Shown here in pieces: positions 1 to 39,192 of a stretch of DNA of 64,000 bases. The stretch lies in IMG/VR virus record IMGVR_UViG_3300011113_000640, positions 124,001 to 188,000 of that record; one strand, 5' to 3'. The notes under the pieces are model-generated. The model saw only the letters and a list, made by a program, of their open reading frames with translations. It made no database searches and was not told the origin of the DNA. The stretch's first letter is position 1, and every line of letters begins with the position of its first letter. The translations under genes and the position numbers were made by a program.

Positions 1-598
1 ATTCGGTATTTAAGAAACTGTTGTAGTAATTTCCACCATTAGGGTTGCCAGAATAGTACGGATTAGAAGGCCATTGGGTCCATCCAATGCCATCTGGACT
101 GCCTTGAGCACTGAGTTTGATGGTAGGTATGGTGAGTGGTGCACTGGGCACATACTGTGGTAAGATTGAATCCACAATGTTTACAGGGGCACGGGCACCG
201 GCCTGCGCATCCACAAACACAGCTTCCACAAGGTTACCACTGCTGCGTTGTATGCTGTAGTTGGCCGGTTGTGCCAAGACTTCTAGCAGTTCTGCACTGG
301 TCAAAGTTACCTTGGCGCGGCCGGTGGGAGCATTCAAGATCACCATGGGTTTTTCTATCAGCAATACATCACCTTCAGTGCTGATCACTCGGAACAGGAA
401 CGTGCTACCTGTGATGTTCACAGGTTTTTCTTGCTGGTTGATAAACTCAAACAAGAGCACGTTATCAACACCTTTGTTTATGGTCAGGACTTTGGCGTAC
501 ACAGGATCATACCTATAGATAAAAGTTTCGCCCGCGCCGGTGTCCATGAGCAAGACTCTGGTGATCTGCTGATAGATATAGGCTTGGGTGGAATACAT
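1..598 (-). CDS. Hypothetical phage protein, probably virion-associated (partial, runs off the window start)
   Basis: Not in the ORF track. Manual translation from ATG at 598 (MYSTQAYIYQQITRVLLMDTG...NKGVDNVLLFEFINQQEKPVNITG...) stays open to position 1. TAAATA lies 6 nt upstream. Confidence 0.8.
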   Translation of the reverse strand, partial: MYSTQAYIYQQITRVLLMDTGAGETFIYRYDPVYAKVLTINKGVDNVLLFEFINQQEKPVNITGSTFLFRVISTEGDVLLIEKPMVILNAPTGRAKVTLTSAELLEVLAQPANYSIQRSSGNLVEAVFVDAQAGARAPVNIVDSILPQYVPSAPLTIPTIKLSAQGSPDGIGWTQWPSNPYYSGNPNGGNYYNSFLNTE

Positions 599-658
599 AC
601 AGAGTATTTAGCAGGTTATGCTAGGGCTCAAAAACGGTCTGGTAAATATCCGTAACTT

Positions 659-1036
659 ATGAGCACTGAATTTTTTGCCCAACTAGCGGAAAAATATCCG
701 TTTATCACCTTGTGTGTGTATGCTACCACGGAATATGTGGGCATCATACAGAATCAAGACGATGCTATAACCACCATCTATGATTTTGGAGCCATACAAG
801 ATCTAGCAATCAAACGCAGATTTCTTGAGCTGGCCAACGTTTGGTGGTGGGAAAGCAATAGAACTGTGCCTATAAACATATTCTTGAAAGGTGAGTGGGA
901 CGTGTTCCGCCCCTATCTGCGTACATTTACCAACAAGGACCTGGAAATCCTGCACGGGCCCATATGCAGTCTCAGTGAAATGAGCCGCAAAAAAAGCAAG
1001 AGAAAAAGTATTACCTTAGTTCGGCGTGTTGAGTAG
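659..1036 (+). CDS. Hypothetical protein
   Basis: 125-aa ORF with TAAATA at 643-648; divergent from the preceding gene. Confidence 0.75.
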   Translation: MSTEFFAQLAEKYPFITLCVYATTEYVGIIQNQDDAITTIYDFGAIQDLAIKRRFLELANVWWWESNRTVPINIFLKGEWDVFRPYLRTFTNKDLEILHGPICSLSEMSRKKSKRKSITLVRRVE

Positions 1037-6693: not shown

Positions 6694-6727
6694 TATTTAC
6701 TATAACACATTTGTAACAAAGATGCAA
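6694..6727 (-). promoter_or_regulatory. Overlapping sigma70-type and late TAAATA promoters
   Basis: TTGCAT-N17-TATAGT overlapping TAAATA (6694-6699), 4 nt from the ATG. Confidence 0.55.
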
Positions 6728-8213: not shown

Positions 8214-8699
8214 TTAGAACTCTATTTCTGTGCCTTCGGCTATAAACAAATCATGCTCAAACGTAGATCCAGGATCTACGGTCCAATGCCAGGTGCCCAT
8301 TAATCCTGCACGCTCAGCATTGTGGGGAATTCCATTTATCCTTATGTTGTCTCGTGGGTCTCTTACACCCAACTCTCGCACAGGAGACACATCATCAAAT
8401 TCATATGGCCCAGTGTAATATATTTCTCCCCAATCAACTTCGGTATAATTGGCCACGATCATACCAAAACGTACAGTGGCTTTGTCCACCACGATTTTCA
8501 TTTGTTTGGTTCCTGCAAATTCAATTGGTATTTCAAAGCTAAACAAAGTTGGTGCGTTTTTTGCGGAAGAATTTTCATCAGTAAATGGTACAAGATCGAC
8601 ATCATCGGAAAATATCTGCTCGCCATCCAAACTGGCAGTCAGGGCGGCGGTTCCTGTGCCCCATCCTTGTACTCTAACTGTTCTTTTGTTCATAGACAT
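8214..8699 (-). CDS. Hypothetical beta-rich protein
   Basis: Start reassigned to 8699, supported by SD AAGGAG and TAAATA at 8714-8719. Confidence 0.65.
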   Translation of the reverse strand: MSMNKRTVRVQGWGTGTAALTASLDGEQIFSDDVDLVPFTDENSSAKNAPTLFSFEIPIEFAGTKQMKIVVDKATVRFGMIVANYTEVDWGEIYYTGPYEFDDVSPVRELGVRDPRDNIRINGIPHNAERAGLMGTWHWTVDPGSTFEHDLFIAEGTEIEF

Positions 8700-8722
8700 A
8701 TCTCCTTGACTGCTATTTAGCC

Positions 8723-9448
8723 CTAGATTCGCCAATGTTGTAATATAACTGGATCTGTCACATCACTGGGTTTAGGACGACCGTGAAACACAAGAATGCT
8801 GGTTTTGGGCCCAAGGTTGGTTCCAGTGCCCGGTGCTCTATGACGTCTGCGTGCGAAGTCATAGCCTCCATCTACGCACTGCCAACGCCAACTCTGTACT
8901 GATTCAAGATCAAAAAATCTGCGGTGTTTTACTTCTATGGCTTCGGACAAAAAATCCTGATCTCCTCTATATTTCAGTTGAATTTCTCGTATGTCCTTTG
9001 AGCAAAATTTGTCCCAGACATAGTCATATTTTGTGGTATCCCAATTCATTACACTTGAATTGATGCCATTGCTTGAAGATCGCCAGAGGTACTTGTAATC
9101 ACGAATGCTCCAAAAATAGTTTGTGTTGTTGACACCCACCCAATCAATGTTGTTGACAATGACTGTGTCTAGATCAAAATACAACAACGGACCAGCGTGA
9201 TGTGCAGGATTGAACAACTGCATTTTATACCACCAGGCACGACCCAACCGTATTTCTGGCCATTCGGTCAGTGCATGTTTGATCATGTGGGCAGGCACAG
9301 ACCTATCAGCTTCGGTATAAACATGCAGATTGAACTCAGAGGTAAGATTACGCCGGAGCATGGCATAAAGACAGTCCACATATTGCCAAGAATATGCACT
9401 GCCGTGTATCACACAGGCACAGTCTATAATCCCAGGCGTTGTATCCAT
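8723..9448 (-). CDS. GT-A glycosyltransferase (GT8-like)
   Basis: WWYKMQLF, YFDLD (DxD), NSSVM, GDQDF and VFHGRPKP motifs. Confidence 0.75.
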   Translation of the reverse strand: MDTTPGIIDCACVIHGSAYSWQYVDCLYAMLRRNLTSEFNLHVYTEADRSVPAHMIKHALTEWPEIRLGRAWWYKMQLFNPAHHAGPLLYFDLDTVIVNNIDWVGVNNTNYFWSIRDYKYLWRSSSNGINSSVMNWDTTKYDYVWDKFCSKDIREIQLKYRGDQDFLSEAIEVKHRRFFDLESVQSWRWQCVDGGYDFARRRHRAPGTGTNLGPKTSILVFHGRPKPSDVTDPVILQHWRI

Positions 9449-10266
9449 AATCCTGATTCAATTTCTTTTACTGTGTATTCAGTATGACAAATTTCCGTCA
9501 ACCATTGGTCTCTATCCACTGTGTATGGTCGTTCAATATCATCTAGTTGTATGCTGACTGGATGAGCCAAGCTAGAGGAGTCTACTATAGGCCTGGTGCC
9601 GGCTAAAGCTGCTTGTATGCCCGGACCAGAATTGTAGTTGACCAAGGCATGACAGTCAAATGCCAAGTTGTAGCTGTCATAGGTATTGGCTACCCGTACA
9701 GGTTTTTCTATGACCACGTCCAAGGGCAAATGTACCAAGCCAGCCCAGTTCAACGGACTTCTGGGATGAGGGCGCACCACAATAGGACGATCCGTGACTT
9801 TGCGTAGTCGTTCTACTTGTTGAACTACCCAGCCTTCTATGCTGACCAGACCCACCGCCTGCTGACTGCGGGCATGTTGCGCCGCTATCACAATCCTAGG
9901 GTTACGACTTAGATTCACGGCCAGGCTTATACCCAGCTTTCTGGGCCGATCCCAATCCAAGTTTTCTGTGTGTCCATAGTATCCGTTGGCCGTTACGGAG
10001 TTCAAGGCAATCTTCCAGGTTTCTCCACGATACAAGGCACCTACATCAATGATTATCACAGGTTTGCCCGCGGATCTATATTGCGACCATACTGACTGGT
10101 TGGCGGCCATGCGTCCGGACCACAGCACACTCCATATGATAACTGCGTCGGCGTCCAGACTATTGGGTTCAACTGTGTGCCCTGCACTACGTAGACTGGT
10201 CAGCACGGCCTGCAACGCAGGACCGCTGTTTTGAGCACACTGATTTGGAAAGTAGGCCACACGCAT
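9424..10266 (-). CDS. Capsule polysaccharide biosynthesis-like protein (KpsC/KpsS-like GT-B)
   Basis: VVRPHP and NYNSGPGIQAALAG motifs. Confidence 0.6.
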   Translation of the reverse strand: MRVAYFPNQCAQNSGPALQAVLTSLRSAGHTVEPNSLDADAVIIWSVLWSGRMAANQSVWSQYRSAGKPVIIIDVGALYRGETWKIALNSVTANGYYGHTENLDWDRPRKLGISLAVNLSRNPRIVIAAQHARSQQAVGLVSIEGWVVQQVERLRKVTDRPIVVRPHPRSPLNWAGLVHLPLDVVIEKPVRVANTYDSYNLAFDCHALVNYNSGPGIQAALAGTRPIVDSSSLAHPVSIQLDDIERPYTVDRDQWLTEICHTEYTVKEIESGLWIQRLGL

Positions 10267-10268
10267 AA

Positions 10269-10284
10269 GGTTAAATATTTAACC
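10269..10284. promoter_or_regulatory. Palindromic bidirectional late promoter
   Basis: Perfect palindrome GGTTAAATATTTAACC, carrying TAAATA on both strands, between divergent ATGs at 10266 and 10285. Confidence 0.75.
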
Positions 10285-11073
10285 ATGAATCTACTACCCT
10301 TGCAAGGAAACCTGGATCAAGATCGATTCTTCGTGTTTGCAGCCGCAGACACTGTGTATTTTGATTTACATGCTAGACCATTGATCAACAGCATCATGAC
10401 CAATGTTCCTGACCTAGGCATTCACATACACATCTATGATCCTAGGCCAGATCAAATTGATTTCTGTCGGTCACGTGCCGGAGTGACCTGCACGCATGAA
10501 ACCTTGGACGACATGAGTTTTCAACAAGCCGCCGATTATTGGATGACTCGAACTGTGTTTTCCAACGAGCGTCAACAGCAAATGTATAAAAAAGGGCAAA
10601 AACTGGGTCGTGGTGAACTGTTGCGATTGATACGGCAGACCTACTATGCCTGTGGTAGATTTGTGAGATTGGCAGAATTGTTGCGACCCGGACAACGATG
10701 CTTGAGCATTGATGTTGATGGTCTGGTTCGCCAGCCGTTTGAACATCAACTTGGTGCCCAGGATTTTTATCTGTACGAGAAACCCAAAGACGGCACGCAC
10801 CTTGCTGGCGCTATCCTTTTCAATGGCACCGCAGGATCACATGAGTTCCTACAAGAATATGCACGACAGTTGCGTGCAAGCATGACCGAAGACGACCTAT
10901 ATTGGTTCTTGGATCAGTTCGTCCTGGATCAGTTGGTAAAACAGTATCGCACGGGCCACCTGCCCATGAGCTACATTGACTGGGCCATGCGCCCAGAAAG
11001 CGCCATATGGTCGGCCAAGGGTCCACGCAAAGAATTAGAAATATTCAAAAATGAACAAAGAAAATACATCTGA
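10285..11073 (+). CDS. Putative nucleotide-diphospho-sugar transferase (GT-A)
   Basis: SIDVD (DxD), LAGAILF and WFLDQ motifs; start reassigned to 10285. Confidence 0.6.
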   Translation: MNLLPLQGNLDQDRFFVFAAADTVYFDLHARPLINSIMTNVPDLGIHIHIYDPRPDQIDFCRSRAGVTCTHETLDDMSFQQAADYWMTRTVFSNERQQQMYKKGQKLGRGELLRLIRQTYYACGRFVRLAELLRPGQRCLSIDVDGLVRQPFEHQLGAQDFYLYEKPKDGTHLAGAILFNGTAGSHEFLQEYARQLRASMTEDDLYWFLDQFVLDQLVKQYRTGHLPMSYIDWAMRPESAIWSAKGPRKELEIFKNEQRKYI

Positions 11074-11080
11074 TCAAAAT

Positions 11081-11767
11081 TTACAATGTGGATCGATAGG
11101 CGATTAGTTTTTGAGCCCACTCGTGTCTGAGTTTACGCATTTCTGCAGATTTGTAAATTTTCTTTTGATTTGATCTATTGAGGTACGTTTGATCCAAATT
11201 GTTACCTGTTAGATCTGCACGATCATGAAACACTGTTGCGTCGATGCGTTGAATTGCCTGGGCTTCTAAACAAATGTGTTGTATCCAAGAATCATTGGAA
11301 TTTGATAAACTCACGCACCCAAATATGTTGGTCCAGACTCGTGGTATCAATGGAAACAATGCAAACTTGTCTCTATAGTTTTCGGTGCTCATATGCAATA
11401 ATCCCACAAAGTCTGCATGGTCTCTTATCAAAGAATCCCATCCTGGTGTTTTCATCACAGCATCATCATTCCATATCAATAACCATTGGCCGCGAGCATG
11501 TTCTGCCAACAAATTATAGTATTTGTGTAGTTCGGAATATCCCCAAATGGGAGTTTCAAATACTTTTGATACAGCCCCAAATGAATTTACAAGTTCATTC
11601 CATGGCATGGAATTTAGATACTCGCGACTTTGGTCATCGTCTTGATCAAATGCCACAGCTATTTCAATATCGGCAGGATTGTCTGCATTGGCCAACAATG
11701 AATGAATACTTCTTTCGACCAAGTGCGGCCGTTGGCGTGTGGGCAATAATACTGTGACCAACATCAT
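11081..11767 (-). CDS. Glycosyltransferase family 2-like
   Basis: VLLPTRQR, AFDQDD and WNDDA motifs; ATGA overlap with the upstream gene. Confidence 0.75.
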   Translation of the reverse strand: MMLVTVLLPTRQRPHLVERSIHSLLANADNPADIEIAVAFDQDDDQSREYLNSMPWNELVNSFGAVSKVFETPIWGYSELHKYYNLLAEHARGQWLLIWNDDAVMKTPGWDSLIRDHADFVGLLHMSTENYRDKFALFPLIPRVWTNIFGCVSLSNSNDSWIQHICLEAQAIQRIDATVFHDRADLTGNNLDQTYLNRSNQKKIYKSAEMRKLRHEWAQKLIAYRSTL

Positions 11768-12711
11768 TTGACCCACTGCCGCATGTGAGCCCACTGCCGT
11801 CCTGACCGCAGATCCTCAAAGCTCCAATGGCACTGGGCCAAGCGTCTGATCCATTGTTCTCGATCTGGCATGACAGGATTTTCTATCAAAGACAAATCTG
11901 TGTTGGCAACGTCGCCGCCTTGACTATAACCAGGGTCATCGGTGATAAAAGCCGGTATGCCTTCTATGGGTGCCACTGCACTTGGAGTAGAATTATGACA
12001 CACCAGGGCCCAACAGTTGACAAAATCTGCAGTGATATGCCGTTCTTGCGGACTCAAAGTCACATTGTATTTTTCAAAATTTATTTGGCTGGGAAAGTTT
12101 TTCCAATCTCCTGGATGCCAACGCACTCTTATGGGTCGGTCTGTGTATTGGCGTAGCTGATTCAAAGTTGATTCAAACCACTGTATCAAGTTTTGTCCTC
12201 GCATGCTCCAGCCCATAGGGCGTTGCATGCATATCAGTATGTGTGAACCTTGAGTGCGCCAGGGTTGCAAGTCCATGTTGTAGTGTGCTCGCATCCTGTT
12301 CCAATTTTCATCAGTGGCTGTTTCATTGCAATAGATACCTTCTCGAGGAAAAACACCGTTGAAACTGTAGCGTAGATATGTGTGTGGATTGGTCCGGTCC
12401 TTGTAGATGAACACATTGCTGTCAATACTGAGCCAATAACGACCACGCTGACGTTGTTCATCCATGACCATTTTCCTTACCTTGTAGTGAGGCAACAGAG
12501 TCTTGCGTGGATTGGCATCAAAAGCATTGCCAATTATGGCACCCACATCACAGGGTTCGTAGACCTGGCTATGTGTTACTTGGGCTTGATCTCCACACCT
12601 GGCCGCACCCTCGGCAAAATAAGTCAATGCATTGACCTTTTCGGTGCCATTGATATGCTTGGGCAAACTGCTTAGATAGCTTTTAATAATCAAAGGTCGA
12701 CCGTTGCTCAT
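11764..12711 (-). CDS. KpsC/KpsS-like GT-B protein
   Basis: IRVRWHP and CHNSTPSAVAPIEGIP motifs; paralog of 9424 and 12683. Confidence 0.55.
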   Translation of the reverse strand: MSNGRPLIIKSYLSSLPKHINGTEKVNALTYFAEGAARCGDQAQVTHSQVYEPCDVGAIIGNAFDANPRKTLLPHYKVRKMVMDEQRQRGRYWLSIDSNVFIYKDRTNPHTYLRYSFNGVFPREGIYCNETATDENWNRMRAHYNMDLQPWRTQGSHILICMQRPMGWSMRGQNLIQWFESTLNQLRQYTDRPIRVRWHPGDWKNFPSQINFEKYNVTLSPQERHITADFVNCWALVCHNSTPSAVAPIEGIPAFITDDPGYSQGGDVANTDLSLIENPVMPDREQWIRRLAQCHWSFEDLRSGRQWAHMRQWVK

Positions 12712-13735
12712 TTTCTTGCACTATATGCCAGGCTTGTCCTGTGACGATTTCGTCAATACTAAACTGTCCATAGGCCAGACTAGATAACCATTTGTAAACT
12801 ATTTGTTCATCCACCCGCGGCGGACAATCAATAAGACTGAGATCATTGCTGGTGACAAGGCTGGCAGCCGTAGGCGCCAAGCTGAAGCTGGGGATTCCTA
12901 CTTGCAGGGCTTCCACAGCAGCTATGCTGTTATAGGTCACCACTGCCCAAACATCATCATCAAGTGCATCATAGATATTGCTGGTGGTAGTTCTTTCTGC
13001 ACGTCCGGGTTTGTCTTTGATCACTACAGGACGATCCGTGTATTGTTGTATGGTGTCAATGGTGGTTTGTATCCAGGCGTCTCTATCTTCACCATAGAAC
13101 TGAAAGGGTTTTTCTGTGCTCATGATCAAAAGAATTTTATCACCCGGGCATTTGCGCCAACCCTGATAGGTCAATCCTGGATTGAATCGGCACAGTGCTT
13201 GCCAACGATCGTCGGGCACATCAAGAAATCTGCGTTGTTGCATGGCATTTTTTTCAATCCTGTGATATATTTTCCTACCGGTGGCATTGTTTTCACTGCG
13301 ATAGTTACCCAGGTAACCAGTTTCCATAAAGTAATAATCACGACCAGTTTGTTCAGCATGTTTGATATATGCTCCTGCGCTGATGCCACGCACCAAGATC
13401 GGATCTGTGATGGTATCCTTGGCACGTTTGTAATCATGGCTGGTCATGAATTGGCTTTCTGGAAATGCGGCCATGACCATGGCTGGATAATCACTGAACT
13501 TGGTCAGTCTAAAATAGCGTTCTTCTTTTTCTCTGATTAGCAACTCAAGATTTTTATCTATGCGTTTACTTTCTTTGTCATCTTGCAATCGGAACAACTG
13601 TCGCAACAGTTGAATCTCACGATATAATTTCAAGGTATCTTCTACACTGTGCTTGAGCGCACTGCACTGATCCACGTATCGCAACCTGTATTCTTCCATG
13701 GGCCAGCGTTCAACCACAGCTATGGGCAAGGTCAT
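12683..13735 (-). CDS. KpsC/KpsS-like GT-B protein
   Basis: METGY and VVTYNSIAAVEALQVGIP motifs; start set at the ATGA overlap (13735). Confidence 0.55.
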   Translation of the reverse strand: MTLPIAVVERWPMEEYRLRYVDQCSALKHSVEDTLKLYREIQLLRQLFRLQDDKESKRIDKNLELLIREKEERYFRLTKFSDYPAMVMAAFPESQFMTSHDYKRAKDTITDPILVRGISAGAYIKHAEQTGRDYYFMETGYLGNYRSENNATGRKIYHRIEKNAMQQRRFLDVPDDRWQALCRFNPGLTYQGWRKCPGDKILLIMSTEKPFQFYGEDRDAWIQTTIDTIQQYTDRPVVIKDKPGRAERTTTSNIYDALDDDVWAVVTYNSIAAVEALQVGIPSFSLAPTAASLVTSNDLSLIDCPPRVDEQIVYKWLSSLAYGQFSIDEIVTGQAWHIVQENEQRSTFDY

Positions 13736-14418
13736 AGAATCCTCTGTTGACAATATTCAGTGAGTATGCGTTCCCTGTGCCATTCATCTGCCTGCGGTGT
13801 GTCGGCAAATTCAGAGAAGCAGGGTGTGCCCAAGGTATAATGCAATAATTTAGCATCGGCATTGGCGCCAAATTCATCTGGCAACCAGTTCCATTCTATA
13901 GGTAATTCTCCAATACGTTCGTCATCCAGCCACGAAAACCTGTGCAGATAACTACCGGGCTGGCCTTGCACAAATTCAGGAGTAAGTTTTCTATTGGGCC
14001 AACTGTTACAGTTCCATAATATCACACTTGACCAATTTTTTCTAGGGTAATCTTCGTTCTTGGCACCCATGTATTTTTCTGTCATGCGTGTTTTGTAATC
14101 GTGCTTGACCACCATGACATCATAGTGCCCTTCCATGCGCATATTCCACAGTTTCACAATGTCATCACGTAATACCATGTCGCCGTCGATGAATATGGCC
14201 CAACCTGTATAACTCATGAGATGTGGCACTAGGAATCTGGTGTACACAAAATGATTGCTGTTGTCACCATGTGTTTCTTCATAATCTTGGAACAGATTTA
14301 GTGCCACCGGCACAATGGCCACGGGATGGCTGGCATGACGAATAATGCTGTTCACGCAAGTATGATAGGCTATGGCTTCTCTGGGATCGTATCCCACAAA
14401 GATTGGAATAGGTGTCAT
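13732..14418 (-). CDS. GT-A glycosyltransferase (GT8-like, T4-like phage type)
   Basis: IFVGYDPRE, FIDGDM, YPRKNWSS, EWNWL and LHYTLGTP motifs. Confidence 0.8.
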   Translation of the reverse strand: MTPIPIFVGYDPREAIAYHTCVNSIIRHASHPVAIVPVALNLFQDYEETHGDNSNHFVYTRFLVPHLMSYTGWAIFIDGDMVLRDDIVKLWNMRMEGHYDVMVVKHDYKTRMTEKYMGAKNEDYPRKNWSSVILWNCNSWPNRKLTPEFVQGQPGSYLHRFSWLDDERIGELPIEWNWLPDEFGANADAKLLHYTLGTPCFSEFADTPQADEWHRERILTEYCQQRIL

Positions 14419-15170
14419 AGCCTTACTATGTCTTCTTCGTCGCAACTATTACCATACTGAATTTCTACAATTTTCAAAGGCTGGTCTGTGGTATTACGCA
14501 ACTGATGCCATTGGCCTGGGTCTACCCAAAAATGTTCATGACGCCGTAGTTCATCTACAAACACAGGATCTCGAGCCAGTTTCATGGTATATACACTGCC
14601 TTGTCCTTCGCTGACTATCCAAAATTCGCTGCGATGATCATGATACTGCATGCTGATACTTTGTCCAGGATTCAGCGTGAGCTCTTTGACTTTGATTCCC
14701 GGCACTTCATGCAACACACGATAATAACCCCAGACACGTTCAGTTTTAGGAGCTTTCCACTCTTCAAGTATCCATGAACTGGAGTTGGCTTTGTCTTGGC
14801 CCCCGACTCCAAACACAAACTCTACACCTGGCACTGTCATTTCTGGAATGTTGTCCTTGGTGCGGTCACCACCATTGGCAAATATGATACGTGCATGTGG
14901 ATAGTGTGCGCGGACCTGTTGCAATAAGTGACAAGCAGTTCCATCCTCATCGTCAAAGGTATAGACTTCATCTACGGGTTTCAAGTTATTGAGTACCGCC
15001 AGGCGCTCAGTCCAGGGCATGAATGAACGACCTTTTTTACGGGCCAACCACTCGTCGCTGTTGATGCCCACAATCAGCTGGTCGCCCAGCATCCTGGCTG
15101 CTTTGATCAGTCGGATATGTCCAGAATGTACCGGATCAAATCCACCGCTTACTACCACTATAGTCGTCAT
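14415..15170 (-). CDS. Cytidylyltransferase-like (HxGH) fused to a mannose-6-phosphate isomerase type II cupin
   Basis: SGGFDPVHSGH and FANGGDR; C-terminal WGYY...SMQYH..RSEFW...EIQYG. Canonical TATAAATA lies 5 nt upstream of ATG 15170. Confidence 0.85.
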   Translation of the reverse strand: MTTIVVVSGGFDPVHSGHIRLIKAARMLGDQLIVGINSDEWLARKKGRSFMPWTERLAVLNNLKPVDEVYTFDDEDGTACHLLQQVRAHYPHARIIFANGGDRTKDNIPEMTVPGVEFVFGVGGQDKANSSSWILEEWKAPKTERVWGYYRVLHEVPGIKVKELTLNPGQSISMQYHDHRSEFWIVSEGQGSVYTMKLARDPVFVDELRRHEHFWVDPGQWHQLRNTTDQPLKIVEIQYGNSCDEEDIVRL

Positions 15171-15202
15171 GCGGATATTTATATGCCGTTTATGGCCCGA
15201 AT

Positions 15203-15958
15203 TTATCTTATGGCCAGACTGGTAAGATTCTGATCCAACCAAGTTACAACCAGGTCTTGTTGTCGCAAGTAACCGTGGGCCTGTATGGAGGCATCGGTAG
15301 ATCTGGGCAACAGTTCAAGTTCTGATAGAGTGTACCAATTGGTGTTTTTTGGATCTCTGGGCTGGTGTTGGCTTTTGTATGTGACCGCATGCACCCAACC
15401 GTTTTGTGTGTCTAGTTTGAAAAATCCATGGCGGCAGTCCCATCCTGTGGTGGCCAACATGTAGATTAGATTGACCAGGCTGTAATGATAGTATTGTCCA
15501 GGTGGTGAAAAATAATCCAGCTGTCGTTGATGTATGCGTTGCGTTATTGGCACACAAAGAGCCAGCATGCCGCCCGGACTGGCGACACCGTGCCAGTTGG
15601 CCAAGGTTGCCAAGGGATTTACGGCATATTGGAAACTGTCATGACACCACAAAATATCAAAACCAGACTTGGGAATTTGTATCTGGTTTTCAAAATCTAT
15701 TTGTTGATATGACACATTGGAGTATTTTTTACACAAATTCAATTTATCAAACAGATCTACGCCGGTGCACTGTATTTCAAGCGGCGTCTGGCTTTCGTCT
15801 CTGGTGGTTCGTGTGGCCCACCACTCTAAATCATCACCAGAACCACAACCTAGATCTACCACGGTTTTGATGCTGAACATGAAGTCGTCATATTCATACA
15901 GTTGGTTGAGTGTTTCTAAACTGTGAGAGTGACTGTCTGTAGTTTTCTCAAATTTCAT
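15203..15958 (-). CDS. Class I SAM-dependent methyltransferase
   Basis: VDLGCGSG, FDILWCHD and PGGML motifs. Confidence 0.85.
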   Translation of the reverse strand: MKFEKTTDSHSHSLETLNQLYEYDDFMFSIKTVVDLGCGSGDDLEWWATRTTRDESQTPLEIQCTGVDLFDKLNLCKKYSNVSYQQIDFENQIQIPKSGFDILWCHDSFQYAVNPLATLANWHGVASPGGMLALCVPITQRIHQRQLDYFSPPGQYYHYSLVNLIYMLATTGWDCRHGFFKLDTQNGWVHAVTYKSQHQPRDPKNTNWYTLSELELLPRSTDASIQAHGYLRQQDLVVTWLDQNLTSLAIR

Positions 15959-21631: not shown

Positions 21632-21641
21632 AGTAGTGTAT

Positions 21642-23207
21642 TTATCGTAGTACTGCTATGAAGGGCATGGGCGGTTTTATGTCATCGCCATGGTCACGCA
21701 GTTGGTTGTTTATGGTGCTGTCATAGGTTTGTAGCAGTTGTAACATGCGCACTGCCAGCACTGTGCTCATGACAAGATCATCAGTTTCGCCGGGTTTGGC
21801 CGCATAGCCCATGCCTGAAGCCACAAAAGTTTTGAGCTCGCTGACCAGGCCCGTGCTACGGATTTTCATTCTGGCAGTTTCTACCAGCAATTTTAATTTG
21901 TTGCAGGCCGCCAGTTTGGGTTTGTTTGTGGTGTTGAATCCCTTGCGATATCTGCGCCCACTGCCCGTGCCGGGCTCACTGAGGAAATAGCCCTGTATGT
22001 TTTCTTCACCGTATTCGGCAATCGAAATCAAGGCCGCTTCGCCAATGGTGTTGTTTTCTATGCTGTAGTAGACTCGTTGAGGATCCTGCACAGTTTCGTT
22101 GATATGGGCACAGATACTGGCCAAGATACGCACCTGTTCAGGTATGGTGGTCCTGTTGTGCCGCCATTCAGCCACTTGTTCGGTGGTTTCTGCTTCAAAC
22201 ACCTGTATGGCTGCAGGATCACCTCCGGTGCCCAGGCTAGGATCCAGTGCGACCACATAGGTCCTGTCTTTTCTGGGACGCTGATACCAACGAACCTGTC
22301 CAGTTTTGTAGAGAGGTTCATGCCCTTGCAAGTCCAGGAGCTTGGCTGGAGCTATCAGAGTCTCATCATTGATAATGAATTCACACCCCATCTCTCGGCG
22401 GAAACGATCTTCACCCAGTTGCGCCCGTTGTTCAGCGGCCCAGGCTTCGTCGCGATCTGGATGTTCGTTCCAGTAACTGCGATAGGCTCTAAAGCCATTG
22501 ATGCCAAGTTCAGTGGGATTGCCGTAGGCATCCTCGCATTTGTTAGCGCCTTTCCACAACAAGGCAAACTGATCTTCATCTGAGTTGGGTGTCGACGTAA
22601 TAATGGCCTTACCACCAGTGGCCAAGGTAGGGCTGATAGATGTCCAAAACTCGCGAGCTATGGTGGGTCGCACGAACGCAAACTCGTCACAATATAACAG
22701 CGTAATACTCATACCACGACCTGTGTTTTCTGTTGTGGTGGTACTAACTATGCGACTACCATTTTCAAAATCCAAGTTGCCTTTGTTGTAACTGGTGACC
22801 CCGGCACGTATATGATCAGGGCACAGTTCGTAAGCATAACGGATACGTTGCATGATCTCCTGCGAGCCGGTGTACTTGTGTGCGGCAATCAAGATGGTTG
22901 AATCTGGACGGAACATGGCCATCCACAACAAGTAACCAGCGGCCGACGTTGACTTACCAGTTTGCCTGGGCATCATACTAATACTGTATCTGTAGTTGTG
23001 ATAGGTGTCTATCAAGCGTTTCTGATAGTCAAACGGATGATACAGCATCTTGCCCCGGGTAGGATGCTGTATGTAGAAAAAGTTGTCCATGAAATACTGC
23101 GGACCTGACACAGGATCTGCACAGGCCATGAATTCACTGAGTTGCTGGTCGGTCCAATGCTGGCGGCGATAAGGTGCTTTGACTAGGGTTGATTCAGTTT
23201 GACTCAT
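21642..23207 (-). CDS. Terminase large subunit (T4 gp17-like)
   Basis: PRQTGKS, YCDEFAF and ITSTPN; nuclease-domain motifs LDPSLGTGGD and DDLVMS. Confidence 0.95.
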   Translation of the reverse strand: MSQTESTLVKAPYRRQHWTDQQLSEFMACADPVSGPQYFMDNFFYIQHPTRGKMLYHPFDYQKRLIDTYHNYRYSISMMPRQTGKSTSAAGYLLWMAMFRPDSTILIAAHKYTGSQEIMQRIRYAYELCPDHIRAGVTSYNKGNLDFENGSRIVSTTTTENTGRGMSITLLYCDEFAFVRPTIAREFWTSISPTLATGGKAIITSTPNSDEDQFALLWKGANKCEDAYGNPTELGINGFRAYRSYWNEHPDRDEAWAAEQRAQLGEDRFRREMGCEFIINDETLIAPAKLLDLQGHEPLYKTGQVRWYQRPRKDRTYVVALDPSLGTGGDPAAIQVFEAETTEQVAEWRHNRTTIPEQVRILASICAHINETVQDPQRVYYSIENNTIGEAALISIAEYGEENIQGYFLSEPGTGSGRRYRKGFNTTNKPKLAACNKLKLLVETARMKIRSTGLVSELKTFVASGMGYAAKPGETDDLVMSTVLAVRMLQLLQTYDSTINNQLRDHGDDIKPPMPFIAVLR

Positions 23208-24331
23208 AGTAAACTACTTATTTCGGGCCATAGTTCGGCAAACTTTCCACACTGATCCGGATGATAGTGTGACTCTATCTGTTGTATGTGATCAGCCAAG
23301 GCCGGGCGCAGATCCTGTTGGCAAGGATTTCGTAGATTACCGATTACCTGTGTAAGGAATCCGCGTTCACTGGCTGATAAGTCAAGTCTGTTCAAGACCT
23401 TTGACACTTCTTTTTCTGCCGCCTGTTGTATGTCAGTGCCCAGTTTCGTAGGATCAAGATATTCGTGTTCAAAAACGTTCTGCCAGTGTATTTCTAGCTC
23501 TTGTTGTTTGACCCATTCTACAAATTCGCACAACCTGGTGGCATTGTACACATTATAAACAGCATGTATGCCCACTTGATGCCCAGGTAGTCTGGTCAAG
23601 ATTCCTAAATTTTGTTGCATCAACGACCAGTCGCCGCCGTGCCTGACATATTCATATCGTGGACCTATGTTATCAAAACTCACATTCCAGCCCACATTAT
23701 GTCGATCAGACAACAAGCGGAAAATGCGGTTTGAGGCTAGATCCACACTGAGATTTGTTATAAGGTTTACCTGTGCTGATGCAGGAACTACAGCCAAAAT
23801 TGATTCGTTTTCTTTCAGCAACAAAGGTTCGCCGCCTATCAAGGCCACTTGACTGATGCTGTCTTGATATTGACTCAGATACTCACATACCTGATGTATA
23901 TAAGGTCTGGTTCCCGAGCGAACCGGAATGCCTTTTAGGTCGGCCCATTTGGAGCTGCTTTTTTCACCGCAGTAGTTGCAACTGAGATTGCAGGTAGTGT
24001 TCCAACGCACATCTATCAGCACAGGTCTATGCTCCATGTTGTCCACTGCTGTAGCATCAAATCCTGGATTCAATTGGTTGTGCCAGTCACGTTCACTGCG
24101 TCCATAGCCGTCGGCCTGTATGCAGTTTTGACAAAACTCAGGGTGCATGCGACCTTGCCGCAGAGTTTGTCGTATTTCCTGCATGACAGGGCCGTGCAGG
24201 ATCTGTTCAATGTTGTGCTCGTTGAGATTGCCCAACATGTTGGGATCTCCTGCACAGCAGGTTTTGACATCACCTCTGGGATTGATATGCAAGCCTCGCC
24301 AAGGAGCTGCACAGTAAACTTTTGACATCAA
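23204..24331 (-). CDS. Radical SAM protein with N-terminal SPASM/twitch-like domain
   Basis: CAAPW...GDVKTCC...CQNC, then CNLSCNYC and GGEP. Confidence 0.85.
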   Translation of the reverse strand: MMSKVYCAAPWRGLHINPRGDVKTCCAGDPNMLGNLNEHNIEQILHGPVMQEIRQTLRQGRMHPEFCQNCIQADGYGRSERDWHNQLNPGFDATAVDNMEHRPVLIDVRWNTTCNLSCNYCGEKSSSKWADLKGIPVRSGTRPYIHQVCEYLSQYQDSISQVALIGGEPLLLKENESILAVVPASAQVNLITNLSVDLASNRIFRLLSDRHNVGWNVSFDNIGPRYEYVRHGGDWSLMQQNLGILTRLPGHQVGIHAVYNVYNATRLCEFVEWVKQQELEIHWQNVFEHEYLDPTKLGTDIQQAAEKEVSKVLNRLDLSASERGFLTQVIGNLRNPCQQDLRPALADHIQQIESHYHPDQCGKFAELWPEISSLL

Positions 24332-26601: not shown

Positions 26602-26614
26602 AATATACTATTTA

Positions 26615-39093: not shown

Positions 39094-39192
39094 AACCGAT
39101 TCCTCTTTGTTTAATAATGATATTTATCGGTTGGATCAAAAAACTACCAGTTAGGAATGCCTTTATAAAGGTCCGTGTTGCTAAATATGCTT

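What the first reader, a model, noticed from the sequence alone, without database searches (positions are those of the whole stretch)
10264..10287. 18-bp intergenic gap holding a perfect palindromic two-way promoter
Seen: CAT-AA-GGTTAAATATTTAACC-ATG. The 16-bp perfect palindrome carries overlapping TAAATA on both strands, 9 and 7 nt from two divergent start codons, with no SD. Inference: a minimal bidirectional promoter driving two leaderless glycosyltransferase mRNAs, with mutually exclusive polymerase occupancy. It is the strongest local support for the leaderless model.
Basis: seen in the sequence. Interest (0 to 1): 0.6.

Follow-up and report, generated by a model that had tools for sequence, protein, structure and literature searches.

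The report
Shared two-way late promoter, near-leaderless genes
An 18-base gap between two back-to-back glycosyltransferase genes of an uncultivated jumbo phage holds two overlapping copies of the phage's late-promoter box (TAAATA), one per strand, placed so close to both start codons that both messages should have almost no leader; related phages keep this layout, but no transcript data could be obtained.

Summary

A 16-bp palindrome is not rare here (10 of 16 bp or more, about 6 expected). Its content and place are what stand out.
- TAAATA is the most enriched hexamer upstream of genes in this 320-kb genome (53 genes, 3.2 expected).
- It sits either 4-10 nt from an ATG with no Shine-Dalgarno (SD) site (27 genes), or 14-27 nt away with an SD site.
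- It precedes virion genes, and the genome encodes a T4 gp55-like late sigma factor.
- All 56 related loci keep the divergent pair. 55 keep the + strand box 5-7 nt from the ATG, and 41 keep the overlapping core TAAATATTTA.
- That core occurs once in this genome and in each of four relatives checked, in those four always at this gene pair.
- Homologues and in-frame stops exclude the upstream TTG at 10231.
- Fold searches support both proteins as glycosyltransferases.

An A at the fifth base after the box predicts starts at 10282 (+) and 10271 (-). That gives leaders of 3 and 5 nt, so near-leaderless rather than strictly leaderless.

The parts
10269..10284 (.). Perfect 16-bp palindrome that fills the gap between the divergent genes; its core TAAATATTTA is at 10272-10281
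   Evidence: The core is unique in the genome and unique in each of four related genomes, always at this gene pair. Only 2 of 18 spacer columns vary among 13 distinct relatives, against 41-59 of 60 flanking coding columns.
10272..10277 (+). TAAATA box serving the + gene, 7 nt before ATG 10285 (predicted gp55-type late promoter -10 element)
   Evidence: It is kept 5-7 nt before the ATG in 55 of 56 related loci.
10276..10281 (-). TAAATA box serving the - gene, 9 nt before ATG 10266; it shares its last two bases with the + strand box
   Evidence: 35 of 56 loci have a - strand box 4-9 nt from the start, and 6 more have one at 14 nt.
10282..10282 (+). Predicted + transcript start (A, fifth base after the box), giving the leader ACC before AUG. 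Inferred, not mapped.
   Evidence: The fifth base after the box is A in 64-69% of promoter-class sites in this genome (53-69% in relative G001), against 25-35% of other TAAATA sites.
10271..10271 (-). Predicted - transcript start (A on the - strand), giving the leader ACCUU before AUG. Inferred, not mapped.
10285..11073 (+). 262-aa GT-A fold glycosyltransferase resembling family GT8 (glycogenin, LgtC, LARGE1), with invariant D143-V-D145; the only + strand gene in a run of - strand genes
   Evidence: Model pLDDT 94; Foldseek E about 5e-9; conserved N-terminus. Pfam and PHROGs found nothing.
9424..10266 (-). 280-aa GT-B-like glycosyltransferase, closest to the beta-Kdo transferases KpsC and WbbB, with invariant H167-P168
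   Evidence: Model pLDDT 92; Foldseek E about 7e-8; N-terminus conserved in alignment A3.
6694..6699 (-). Another SD-less box in the window: TAAATA 4 nt before ATG 6689, so the A of the ATG is the fifth base after the box
21639..21644 (-). TAAATA 7 nt before ATG 21631 of a 598-aa virion structural protein, with no SD
26609..26614 (-). TAAATA 7 nt before ATG 26601 of a 538-aa virion structural protein, with no SD
39121..39126 (-). Example of the leadered class: TAAATA 27 nt before the tail sheath ATG 39093, with an AGAGGA SD in between

Best explanation
The gap is a compact bidirectional late promoter. The phage encodes a T4 gp55-like late sigma factor that, with host core RNA polymerase, is inferred to recognise a -10-type box TAAATA with no -35 element. 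Initiation is predicted at an A about 5 nt downstream of the box.

Here two such boxes lie on opposite strands and overlap by 2 bp (TAAATATTTA). Polymerase bound in one orientation would start at about 10282 and transcribe the GT8-like gene. Bound in the other orientation it would start at about 10271 and transcribe the Kdo-transferase-like gene and probably the - strand genes downstream of it.

Both messages would carry only 3 to 5 untranslated bases and no Shine-Dalgarno (SD) site, so they must be translated by the leaderless (5'-proximal AUG) route. The two polymerase footprints overlap almost fully, so one binding event should exclude the other.

What is shown: the sequence, both start codons, the genome-wide behaviour of the box, its conservation, the sigma gene and the protein folds. 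What is inferred: that the box is bound by the gp55-like sigma, the exact transcript starts, the mode of translation and the competition between orientations.
For: 1. TAAATA is the most enriched hexamer in the 40 nt upstream of genes: 53 genes against 3.2 expected.
2. 27 of 159 TAAATA sites are followed at 3-10 nt by the first ATG of a gene. Most of the 14 other hexamers of the same composition give 1-5; the exceptions are the shifted versions AAATAT (15) and ATAAAT (9), and ATAATA (10).
3. The spacing is bimodal: 4-10 nt with no SD, or 14-27 nt with an SD. The complete 337-kb relative G001 shows the same pattern.
4. Of the 16 SD-less-class genes whose G001 orthologue has the same called start, 15 keep the box at 3-10 nt, 14 at the identical spacing, while the flanks diverge. 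Three further orthologues had a different called start and were not resolved.
5. The box precedes the tail sheath, tail tube, head-tail adaptor and several virion protein genes.
6. The genome encodes a gp55-like late sigma (phrog_234 E 5e-24, phrog_12791 E 5e-62). No upstream -35-like conservation appears in the aligned sites.
7. A is enriched at the fifth base after the box in sites where that base is not the ATG.
8. At this locus all 56 related loci keep the divergent pair, 55 keep the + box at 5-7 nt and 41 keep the overlapping core. The core is unique in each of four related genomes and always sits at this pair. The spacer is far more conserved than the flanking codons.
9. Stop-restart coupling cannot apply here, because neither gene has a same-strand upstream neighbour. 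It could explain only 2-4 of the 27 SD-less genes genome-wide.
10. Related Rak2-like phages are reported to carry a gp55-like sigma and a predicted ATAAATA late motif (PMC5259590).
11. Overlapping -10 elements on opposite strands are an established cause of divergent transcription in bacteria (bioRxiv 10.1101/2020.01.31.928960).
Against: 2. Only six of the eight bases of the T4 box are conserved.
3. The T4 co-activator gp33 and the clamp gp45 were not detected. Both searches had no positive control, so this is weak evidence.
4. In some related clades the - strand box is degraded to TACATA or TGAATA, or is absent with a 44-nt spacer (nine loci). In others the - gene starts with GTG. The bidirectional half is therefore less universal than the + half.
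5. With spacings of 7 and 9 nt the messages are probably not strictly leaderless. How well 3-5-nt leaders are translated in the unknown host is not known.
6. The gene set behind the statistics is a greedy ORF call of my own, not a curated annotation.
Confidence: 0.7

Rival explanations
1. The palindrome is, instead or in addition, the operator of a dimeric phage or host DNA-binding protein that controls both glycosyltransferase genes together.
For: The symmetry extends 3 bp beyond what two overlapping boxes require. A second clade has a different perfect 16-bp palindrome in which the outer G-C pair is replaced by A-T (L022 type). All 18 spacer bases, not only the core, are nearly invariant within the window-type clade.
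Against: There is no second copy of the palindrome or of its 12-bp or 14-bp inner part anywhere in the genome. Across clades the symmetric part shrinks to 10-12 bp. The arm bases are also the predicted first transcribed bases and the bases just before each ATG, which would explain their conservation without a binding protein.
Confidence: 0.1
2. Transcription starts elsewhere: a sigma-70-type promoter inside the partner gene for the + gene, and read-through from the - strand genes upstream for the - gene. On this view TAAATA near start codons is an A/U-rich translation element within the mRNA, not a promoter.
For: A weak sigma-70-like match (9 of 12) lies at 10053-10082 on the + strand. The - strand genes at 11081-11794 and beyond could read through, since only 7 nt separate the convergent gene ends. 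No transcript data exclude this.
Against: Sigma-70-like matches in the region are not above shuffles: 8 against 5.2 with sd 2.6. TAAATA also sits 14-27 nt upstream of SD-led genes, upstream of the SD itself and outside any ribosome-binding window. Position-specific A enrichment 5 nt after the box appears in both classes. The box resembles the T4 late box, the sigma is encoded, and the box is linked to virion genes.
Confidence: 0.12
3. The palindrome acts as an RNA hairpin (terminator, processing site, or start-codon mask) on read-through transcripts.
For: It can form a 6-bp stem next to either start codon.
Against: The fold is weak and no better than shuffles: -5.2 and -7.3 kcal/mol, with z-scores of -0.66 and 0.0. 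No T-run follows it on either strand. The terminator scan does not report it. Relatives keep the box but not the stem.
Confidence: 0.03
4. It is a chance palindrome with no function in a very short intergenic gap.
For: Palindromes of this length occur at about the chance rate in this genome.
Against: It is conserved across 56 loci down to 40% protein identity, it is unique in each genome and always at this place, and it fits a genome-wide motif.
Confidence: 0.02

Closest known systems
T4-type late promoters: the TATAAATA box read by the late sigma gp55, and the ATAAATA motif predicted in the Rak2-like jumbo phages CBB and GAP32
   Same: A single A/T-rich -10-region box with no -35 element, placed upstream of virion genes, in a phage that encodes a gp55-family sigma (PMC2988020; PMC5259590).
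   Different: Only TAAATA is invariant; the two 5' bases of the T4 box are not conserved. gp33 and gp45 homologues were not found. About half of the box-proximal genes have the box 4-10 nt from the ATG. The pattern count that captures this is not enriched in T4, PA5oct, Atu_ph07, the Rak2-like phage Ecwhy_1 or SCTP-2.
Prokaryotic bidirectional promoters formed by -10 elements that coincide on opposite strands (Warman et al., Grainger laboratory)
   Same: Two -10-type elements on opposite strands share bases. Divergent starts are predicted a few bp apart. Both directions lead into protein-coding genes. One polymerase binding event should exclude the other (PMC12825309).
   Different: The element is a phage late-sigma box, not the sigma-70 TATAAT. 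The boxes overlap by 2 bp, giving a predicted start-to-start distance of 11 bp rather than the common 18 bp. Both transcripts are near-leaderless. The arrangement is conserved across a phage clade rather than being a by-product of AT-rich foreign DNA.
Leaderless phage mRNAs, such as lambda cI transcribed from PRM (from my own knowledge), and 5'-terminal AUG recognition by ribosomes (Brock et al. 2008, as cited in PMC5312081)
   Same: The promoter is placed so that transcription begins at or next to the AUG, there is no SD, and the start codon here is ATG.
   Different: Here it is a class of about 27-29 genes per genome rather than single regulatory genes. For this pair the predicted leaders are 3 and 5 nt, not zero. 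TSS mapping in the jumbo phages phiKZ (early phase) and AR9 found no leaderless phage transcripts.
Huge phages that encode translation-initiation parts such as IF1 and ribosomal protein S21 (Al-Shayeb et al. 2020, PMC7162821)
   Same: This genome encodes an IF1 homologue and a bS21 homologue, both above Pfam's cut-offs.
   Different: That paper does not contain the word 'leaderless' in a term search. A link to SD-less, near-leaderless late genes is my speculation and was not tested.

Membership tests
T4-type (gp55) late promoter | An A/T-rich box related to TATAAATA at the -10 position | tested here: inconclusive
   TAAATA, the last six bases of the T4 box, is invariant in the collected sites by construction. 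The two bases 5' of it show no conservation.
T4-type (gp55) late promoter | No conserved -35 element | tested here: met
   No column from -30 to -1 exceeds 0.25 bits in 50 aligned sites from this genome or 61 from G001.
T4-type (gp55) late promoter | The phage encodes a gp55-family sigma factor | tested here: met
   A 300-aa ORF at genome 208222-209124 (-) matches phrog_234 (E 5e-24) and phrog_12791 (E 5e-62).
T4-type (gp55) late promoter | The co-activator gp33 and the sliding clamp gp45 act as the activator | tested here: inconclusive
   No match to phrog_223 or to T4 gp33. Neither search had a positive control, and the record is estimated 93% complete. The same absence is reported for phage CBB.
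T4-type (gp55) late promoter | Located upstream of late (virion) genes | tested here: met
   The box precedes the tail sheath, tail tube, head-tail adaptor and four virion structural protein genes within the window.
T4-type (gp55) late promoter | Transcription starts about one helical turn downstream of the box's upstream edge, late in infection | not testable with these tools
   The only evidence is an A enrichment at the fifth base after the box.
Bidirectional promoter with shared -10 elements | -10-type elements on opposite strands that overlap or abut | tested here: met
   The boxes at 10272-10277 (+) and 10281-10276 (-) share 2 bp.
Bidirectional promoter with shared -10 elements | Divergent transcript starts 7-25 bp apart | not testable with these tools
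   The starts are predicted 11 bp apart, at 10271 and 10282, from the A preference.
Leaderless mRNA | A 5' untranslated region of zero or only a few bases (under 10 nt in the definition used in PMC8244752) | not testable with these tools
   Inferred from the box-to-ATG spacings of 7 and 9 nt and predicted leaders of 3 and 5 nt.
Leaderless mRNA | No Shine-Dalgarno sequence in front of the start codon | tested here: met
   No AGGA, GGAG, GAGG or AAGG lies within 13 nt of either start. The TAAGG 14 nt upstream of the + ATG is not conserved in other clades.
Glycosyltransferase (both genes) | A GT-A fold with a DxD motif for the + gene; a GT-B-like fold with an HP motif for the - gene | tested here: met
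   Foldseek top hits are glycogenin, LgtC and LARGE1 (E 5e-9) for the + gene and KpsC and WbbB (E 7e-8) for the - gene. D143-x-D145 and H167-P168 are invariant. Sequence profiles (Pfam, PHROGs, PDB) gave nothing. The TM-scores of about 0.5 show fold-level similarity only.

The most novel reading that the evidence does not exclude
An uncultivated clade of jumbo phages of roughly 320-345 kb has organised much of its late expression around messages with 0-5-nt leaders. The late box TAAATA sits 4-10 nt from the AUG at about 27-29 genes per genome, a pattern not enriched in T4, PA5oct, Atu_ph07, a Rak2-like phage or SCTP-2. The same genome encodes IF1 and ribosomal protein bS21, so the phage may retune host ribosomes late in infection towards SD-independent, 5'-end-dependent initiation. 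The palindrome would be the limiting case, where two such units share one 10-bp core.
Probability: 0.3. Interest if true: 0.75.

Novelty: new variant of a known kind. Interest (0 to 1): 0.55.

Why it matters
If the prediction holds, this is a natural 18-bp element that drives two genes in opposite directions and dispenses with ribosome-binding sites. It would also be the clearest single test site for a clade-wide habit of near-leaderless late messages in jumbo phages.

That habit would bear on three things. It affects how gene callers pick starts in such genomes. It bears on how phage-encoded IF1 and bS21 might be used. It also extends the symmetric bidirectional-promoter principle from sigma-70 promoters to a phage late sigma. 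The element is small enough to test directly in vitro.

Tried and rejected
No reads were laid and I tried no other route.
- DNA similarity of the region to GenBank phages found nothing.
- Pfam and PHROGs gave nothing for either protein, and a profile search of PDB sequences gave nothing. Only fold comparison gave a function.
- Upstream TTG 10231 with AGGA 8 nt before it as the + gene start: rejected. The listed relatives are almost all called at 259-263 aa, those aligned share the ATG N-terminus, and 25 of 56 loci have no possible upstream start.
- Stop-restart translational coupling as the reason for SD-less starts: rejected for this pair, which has no same-strand upstream gene, and it fits only 2-4 of 27 genes genome-wide.
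- Hairpin or terminator role: rejected.
- Palindrome rarity as an argument: rejected, because counts are near chance.
- Literature: no paper in the searchable library combines leaderless with TAAATA or TATAAATA. The one hit combining leaderless, late promoter and T4-like was irrelevant.
- Host and habitat: cluster look-up and contig look-up gave no names, so the host remains unknown.
- T4 gp33 and gp45 homologues were not found, and no IF3 C-terminal domain was found.
Full report
**Setting.** The window is bases 124,001-188,000 of a single 320,541-bp virus record with 46% G+C, estimated 93% complete. It is a jumbo myophage. The 1118-aa tail sheath is 39-45% identical to those of Pseudomonas phage PA5oct and Agrobacterium phage Atu_ph07. 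The window also holds a T4-type large terminase, a RecA/UvsX-like protein, a gp32-like protein and virion genes. No GenBank phage matches the region at DNA level. Hundreds of metagenome proteins do match, including some on contigs of about 300-356 kb.

**Observation.** The sequence is exactly as described: CAT 10264-10266, AA, GGTTAAATATTTAACC 10269-10284, ATG 10285-10287. TAAATA lies at 10272-10277 on the + strand, 7 nt before the ATG. It lies at 10281-10276 on the - strand, 9 nt before the ATG at 10266. A perfect 16-bp palindrome is not unusual in itself: the genome has 10 of 16 bp or longer, against about 6.4 in Markov-1 simulations. The 10-bp core TAAATATTTA occurs once.

**Start codons.**
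- For the - gene, the TAA of its own box is an in-frame stop 15 nt upstream, so ATG 10266 is the first possible start. The N-terminus M-R/K-V/L/I-A/S-Y-F-P aligns across clades.
- For the + gene, the rival start TTG 10231 has an AGGA 8 nt upstream. It is excluded on three grounds. The relatives listed (66-94% identity) are almost all called at 259-263 aa. Those aligned begin with the same M-x-L-P-P-L motif. In 25 of 56 related loci an in-frame stop leaves no upstream start at all.

**What TAAATA is in this genome.** I called 380 non-overlapping ORFs with a greedy script.
- In the 40 nt upstream of the first ATG, TAAATA is the most enriched hexamer: 53 genes against 3.2 expected. SD-like hexamers such as AAGGAG come next.
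- The distance from the box to the ATG is bimodal. In 27 genes it is 4-10 nt with no room for an SD. In about 23 genes it is 14-27 nt with an SD-like core in most, commonly 5-7 nt after the box.
- Most of the 14 other hexamers of the same base composition precede gene starts at 3-10 nt only 1-5 times. The exceptions are the shifted versions AAATAT (15) and ATAAAT (9), and ATAATA (10). TAAATA does so 27 times.
- The box precedes the tail sheath, tail tube, head-tail adaptor and several virion structural genes.
- No upstream position is conserved, so there is no -35 element.
- The fifth base after the box is A in 64-69% of sites where that base is not the ATG itself (53-69% in G001). In TAAATA sites away from gene starts it is A in 25-35%. 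This is what an initiating nucleotide would look like.
- The genome encodes a 300-aa homologue of the T4 late sigma gp55.
- T4 late promoters are a lone TATA box at the -10 position with no -35 element (PMC2988020). Rak2-like jumbo phages are reported to have a gp55-like sigma and a predicted ATAAATA late motif (PMC5259590).

I therefore read TAAATA as the late promoter box, with initiation about 5 nt downstream. This assignment is an inference.

**The SD-less class is selected, not accidental.** A complete relative, G001 (337,119 bp, with terminal repeats), gives the same bimodal distribution: 29 genes at 3-10 nt and 32 at 11-30 nt. Of the 19 SD-less-class genes with an orthologue there, 16 have the same called start. 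Of those 16, 15 keep the box at 3-10 nt, 14 at the identical spacing, while the bases around the box diverge. Stop-restart coupling could explain only 2-4 of the 27 genes.

The simple pattern TAAATA-N4-7-ATG can be compared with its reversed control:

| Genome | Pattern | Reversed control |
|---|---|---|
| This genome (G000) | 39 | 7 |
| G001 | 39 | 12 |
| G002 | 34 | 13 |
| G004 | 15 | 3 |
| G003 | 18 | 18 |
| PA5oct | 39 | 58 |
| Atu_ph07 | 36 | 56 |
| Ecwhy_1 (Rak2-like) | 20 | 41 |
| SCTP-2 | 66 | 75 |
| T4 | 16 | 20 |

The layout is therefore a trait of this uncultivated clade and is not enriched in its cultured distant relatives.

**Conservation at this locus.**
- All 56 IMG/VR loci found with the + protein carry the homologue of the - protein divergently next to it, at 34-82% and 40-89% protein identity.
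- The spacer is 12-22 nt in 45 loci and 30-44 nt in 11.
- 55 of 56 loci keep a + strand TAAATA 5-7 nt before the ATG. The exception has TTAATA.
- 41 loci keep the overlapping core. 35 have the - strand box 4-9 nt from the - gene start, which is GTG in some clades.
- In four related genomes of 177-344 kb the core TAAATATTTA occurs exactly once, always at this gene pair.
- Among 13 distinct sequences with the 18-nt spacer, 2 of 18 spacer columns vary. By contrast 41-59 of 60 flanking coding columns vary, as do 38 of 40 third codon positions.
- The perfectly symmetric part ranges from 10 to 16 bp between clades. The full palindrome is therefore not the conserved unit; the two boxes and the bases between box and ATG are.
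- Nine loci of one clade have a 44-nt spacer and no - strand box, so the bidirectional half is less universal than the + half.

**Mechanism.** The + gene is the only + strand gene in a long run of - strand genes, so it needs its own promoter. The only conserved candidate is the box in the gap. Applying the A-at-position-5 rule gives predicted starts at A10282 (+; leader ACC) and at 10271 (-; leader ACCUU), 11 bp apart. Neither leader can hold an SD. Both genes would therefore rely on recognition of an AUG close to the 5' end.

**The genes.** Sequence profiles were silent, but confident models (pLDDT 94 and 92) match glycosyltransferases.
- The + protein has a GT-A fold like glycogenin, LgtC and LARGE1, with an invariant D-x-D motif.
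- The - protein has a GT-B-like fold closest to the beta-Kdo transferases KpsC and WbbB, with an invariant H-P motif.
- They sit in a sugar-modification cluster: a further glycosyltransferase at 8723-9448, a GT2 at 11081-11794, a GT8 at 13732-14445, a cytidylyltransferase-cupin fusion and a methyltransferase.

**Rivals.**
- An operator for a dimeric regulator cannot be excluded, because of the extra symmetry and the very high conservation of the whole spacer. However, there is no second site in the genome, and the arms double as the predicted initial transcribed bases.
- Transcription from elsewhere, with TAAATA acting as an mRNA element, is disfavoured. The box lies upstream of the SD in the leadered class, and sigma-70-like matches nearby are at background level.
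- A hairpin role is rejected.
- Chance is rejected by the conservation.

**Limits.** The host is unknown. The gene set is my own ORF call.

**Verdict.** The messages are predicted to be near-leaderless (3 and 5 nt) rather than leaderless, and the palindrome is largely a consequence of two overlapping late boxes. It is a new variant of known kinds: a T4-type late promoter, a symmetric bidirectional promoter and leaderless initiation. It occurs in a clade where the SD-less late layout appears systematic.

Noticed in passing
genome G000:C1:34490-34708 (-) and 89462-89683 (-), outside the window: The phage encodes a 72-aa IF1 homologue (PF01176, E 4.8e-20) and a 73-aa ribosomal protein bS21 homologue (PF01165, E 1.2e-16), both above Pfam's cut-offs. 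The bS21 gene has a TAAATA box 32 nt upstream and an AGGAA SD. A 417-aa ClpX-like ORF lies just upstream of it. No IF3 C-terminal domain was found.
   Followed up: partly
window 596-661: A second divergent pair has two separate, non-overlapping TAAATA boxes: 605-610 on the - strand, 6 nt from ATG 598, and 643-648 on the + strand, 10 nt from ATG 659. They are 32 nt apart in a 60-nt gap. The orthologous pair in G001 keeps both spacings.
   Followed up: partly
genome G000:C1:40722, 51280, 70562, 101005, 101278, outside the window: There are five copies of a G+C-centred palindrome, GGTTAGTG-NN-CACTAACC. Two of them extend to perfect 20-bp and 24-bp palindromes, and some are followed by a T-run. 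They look like reused terminator hairpins. They share the outer GGTTA...TAACC with the palindrome studied here, but with different spacing.
   Followed up: partly
window 8214-15958: A sugar-modification cluster surrounds the finding: glycosyltransferases at 8723-9448, 9424-10266, 10285-11073, 11081-11794 (GT2) and 13732-14445 (GT8); a cytidylyltransferase fused to a mannose-6-phosphate isomerase-type cupin at 14415-15242; and a methyltransferase at 15203-15958. The target (virion protein, DNA or host surface) is unknown.
   Followed up: partly
window 23204-24331 (-): The ORF next to the large terminase matches SPASM at residues 7-70 and the radical SAM core at residues 112-237. That is the reverse of the usual domain order. 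The called TTG start may be wrong, or the protein may be permuted.
   Followed up: no
genome G000:C1:208222-209124 (-), outside the window: The gp55-like late sigma ORF is 300 aa, against 185 aa in T4. It matches the longer family phrog_12791 over most of its length. T4-type gp33 and gp45 were not detected.
   Followed up: partly
whole genome, 40 nt upstream of genes: TATAAT is also enriched upstream of genes (28 genes against 3.7 expected). This suggests a separate set of sigma-70-type promoters, presumably early, usually with SD-led leaders.
   Followed up: no
related loci L006, L008-L014 and L016 (IMG/VR): One clade has a 44-nt spacer and keeps the + strand box 7 nt from the ATG, but has no TAAATA for the - gene. 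Its - protein is only 40-42% identical to the window's. In other clades the - gene starts with GTG 4 or 7 nt after its box.
   Followed up: partly
record G003 (270 kb relative): G003 keeps the overlapping core at the gene pair but shows no genome-wide excess of TAAATA-N4-7-ATG over the reversed control (18 against 18), unlike G000, G001, G002 and G004.
   Followed up: no
Escherichia phage Ecwhy_1 (MH791411.1), 314848-325877: The string TAAATATAGTATAATG recurs seven times at intervals of about 1.2 kb, plus one near-copy at 314848 (TAAATATGATATAATG). This suggests a tandem array of paralogous genes with identical upstream regions.
   Followed up: no
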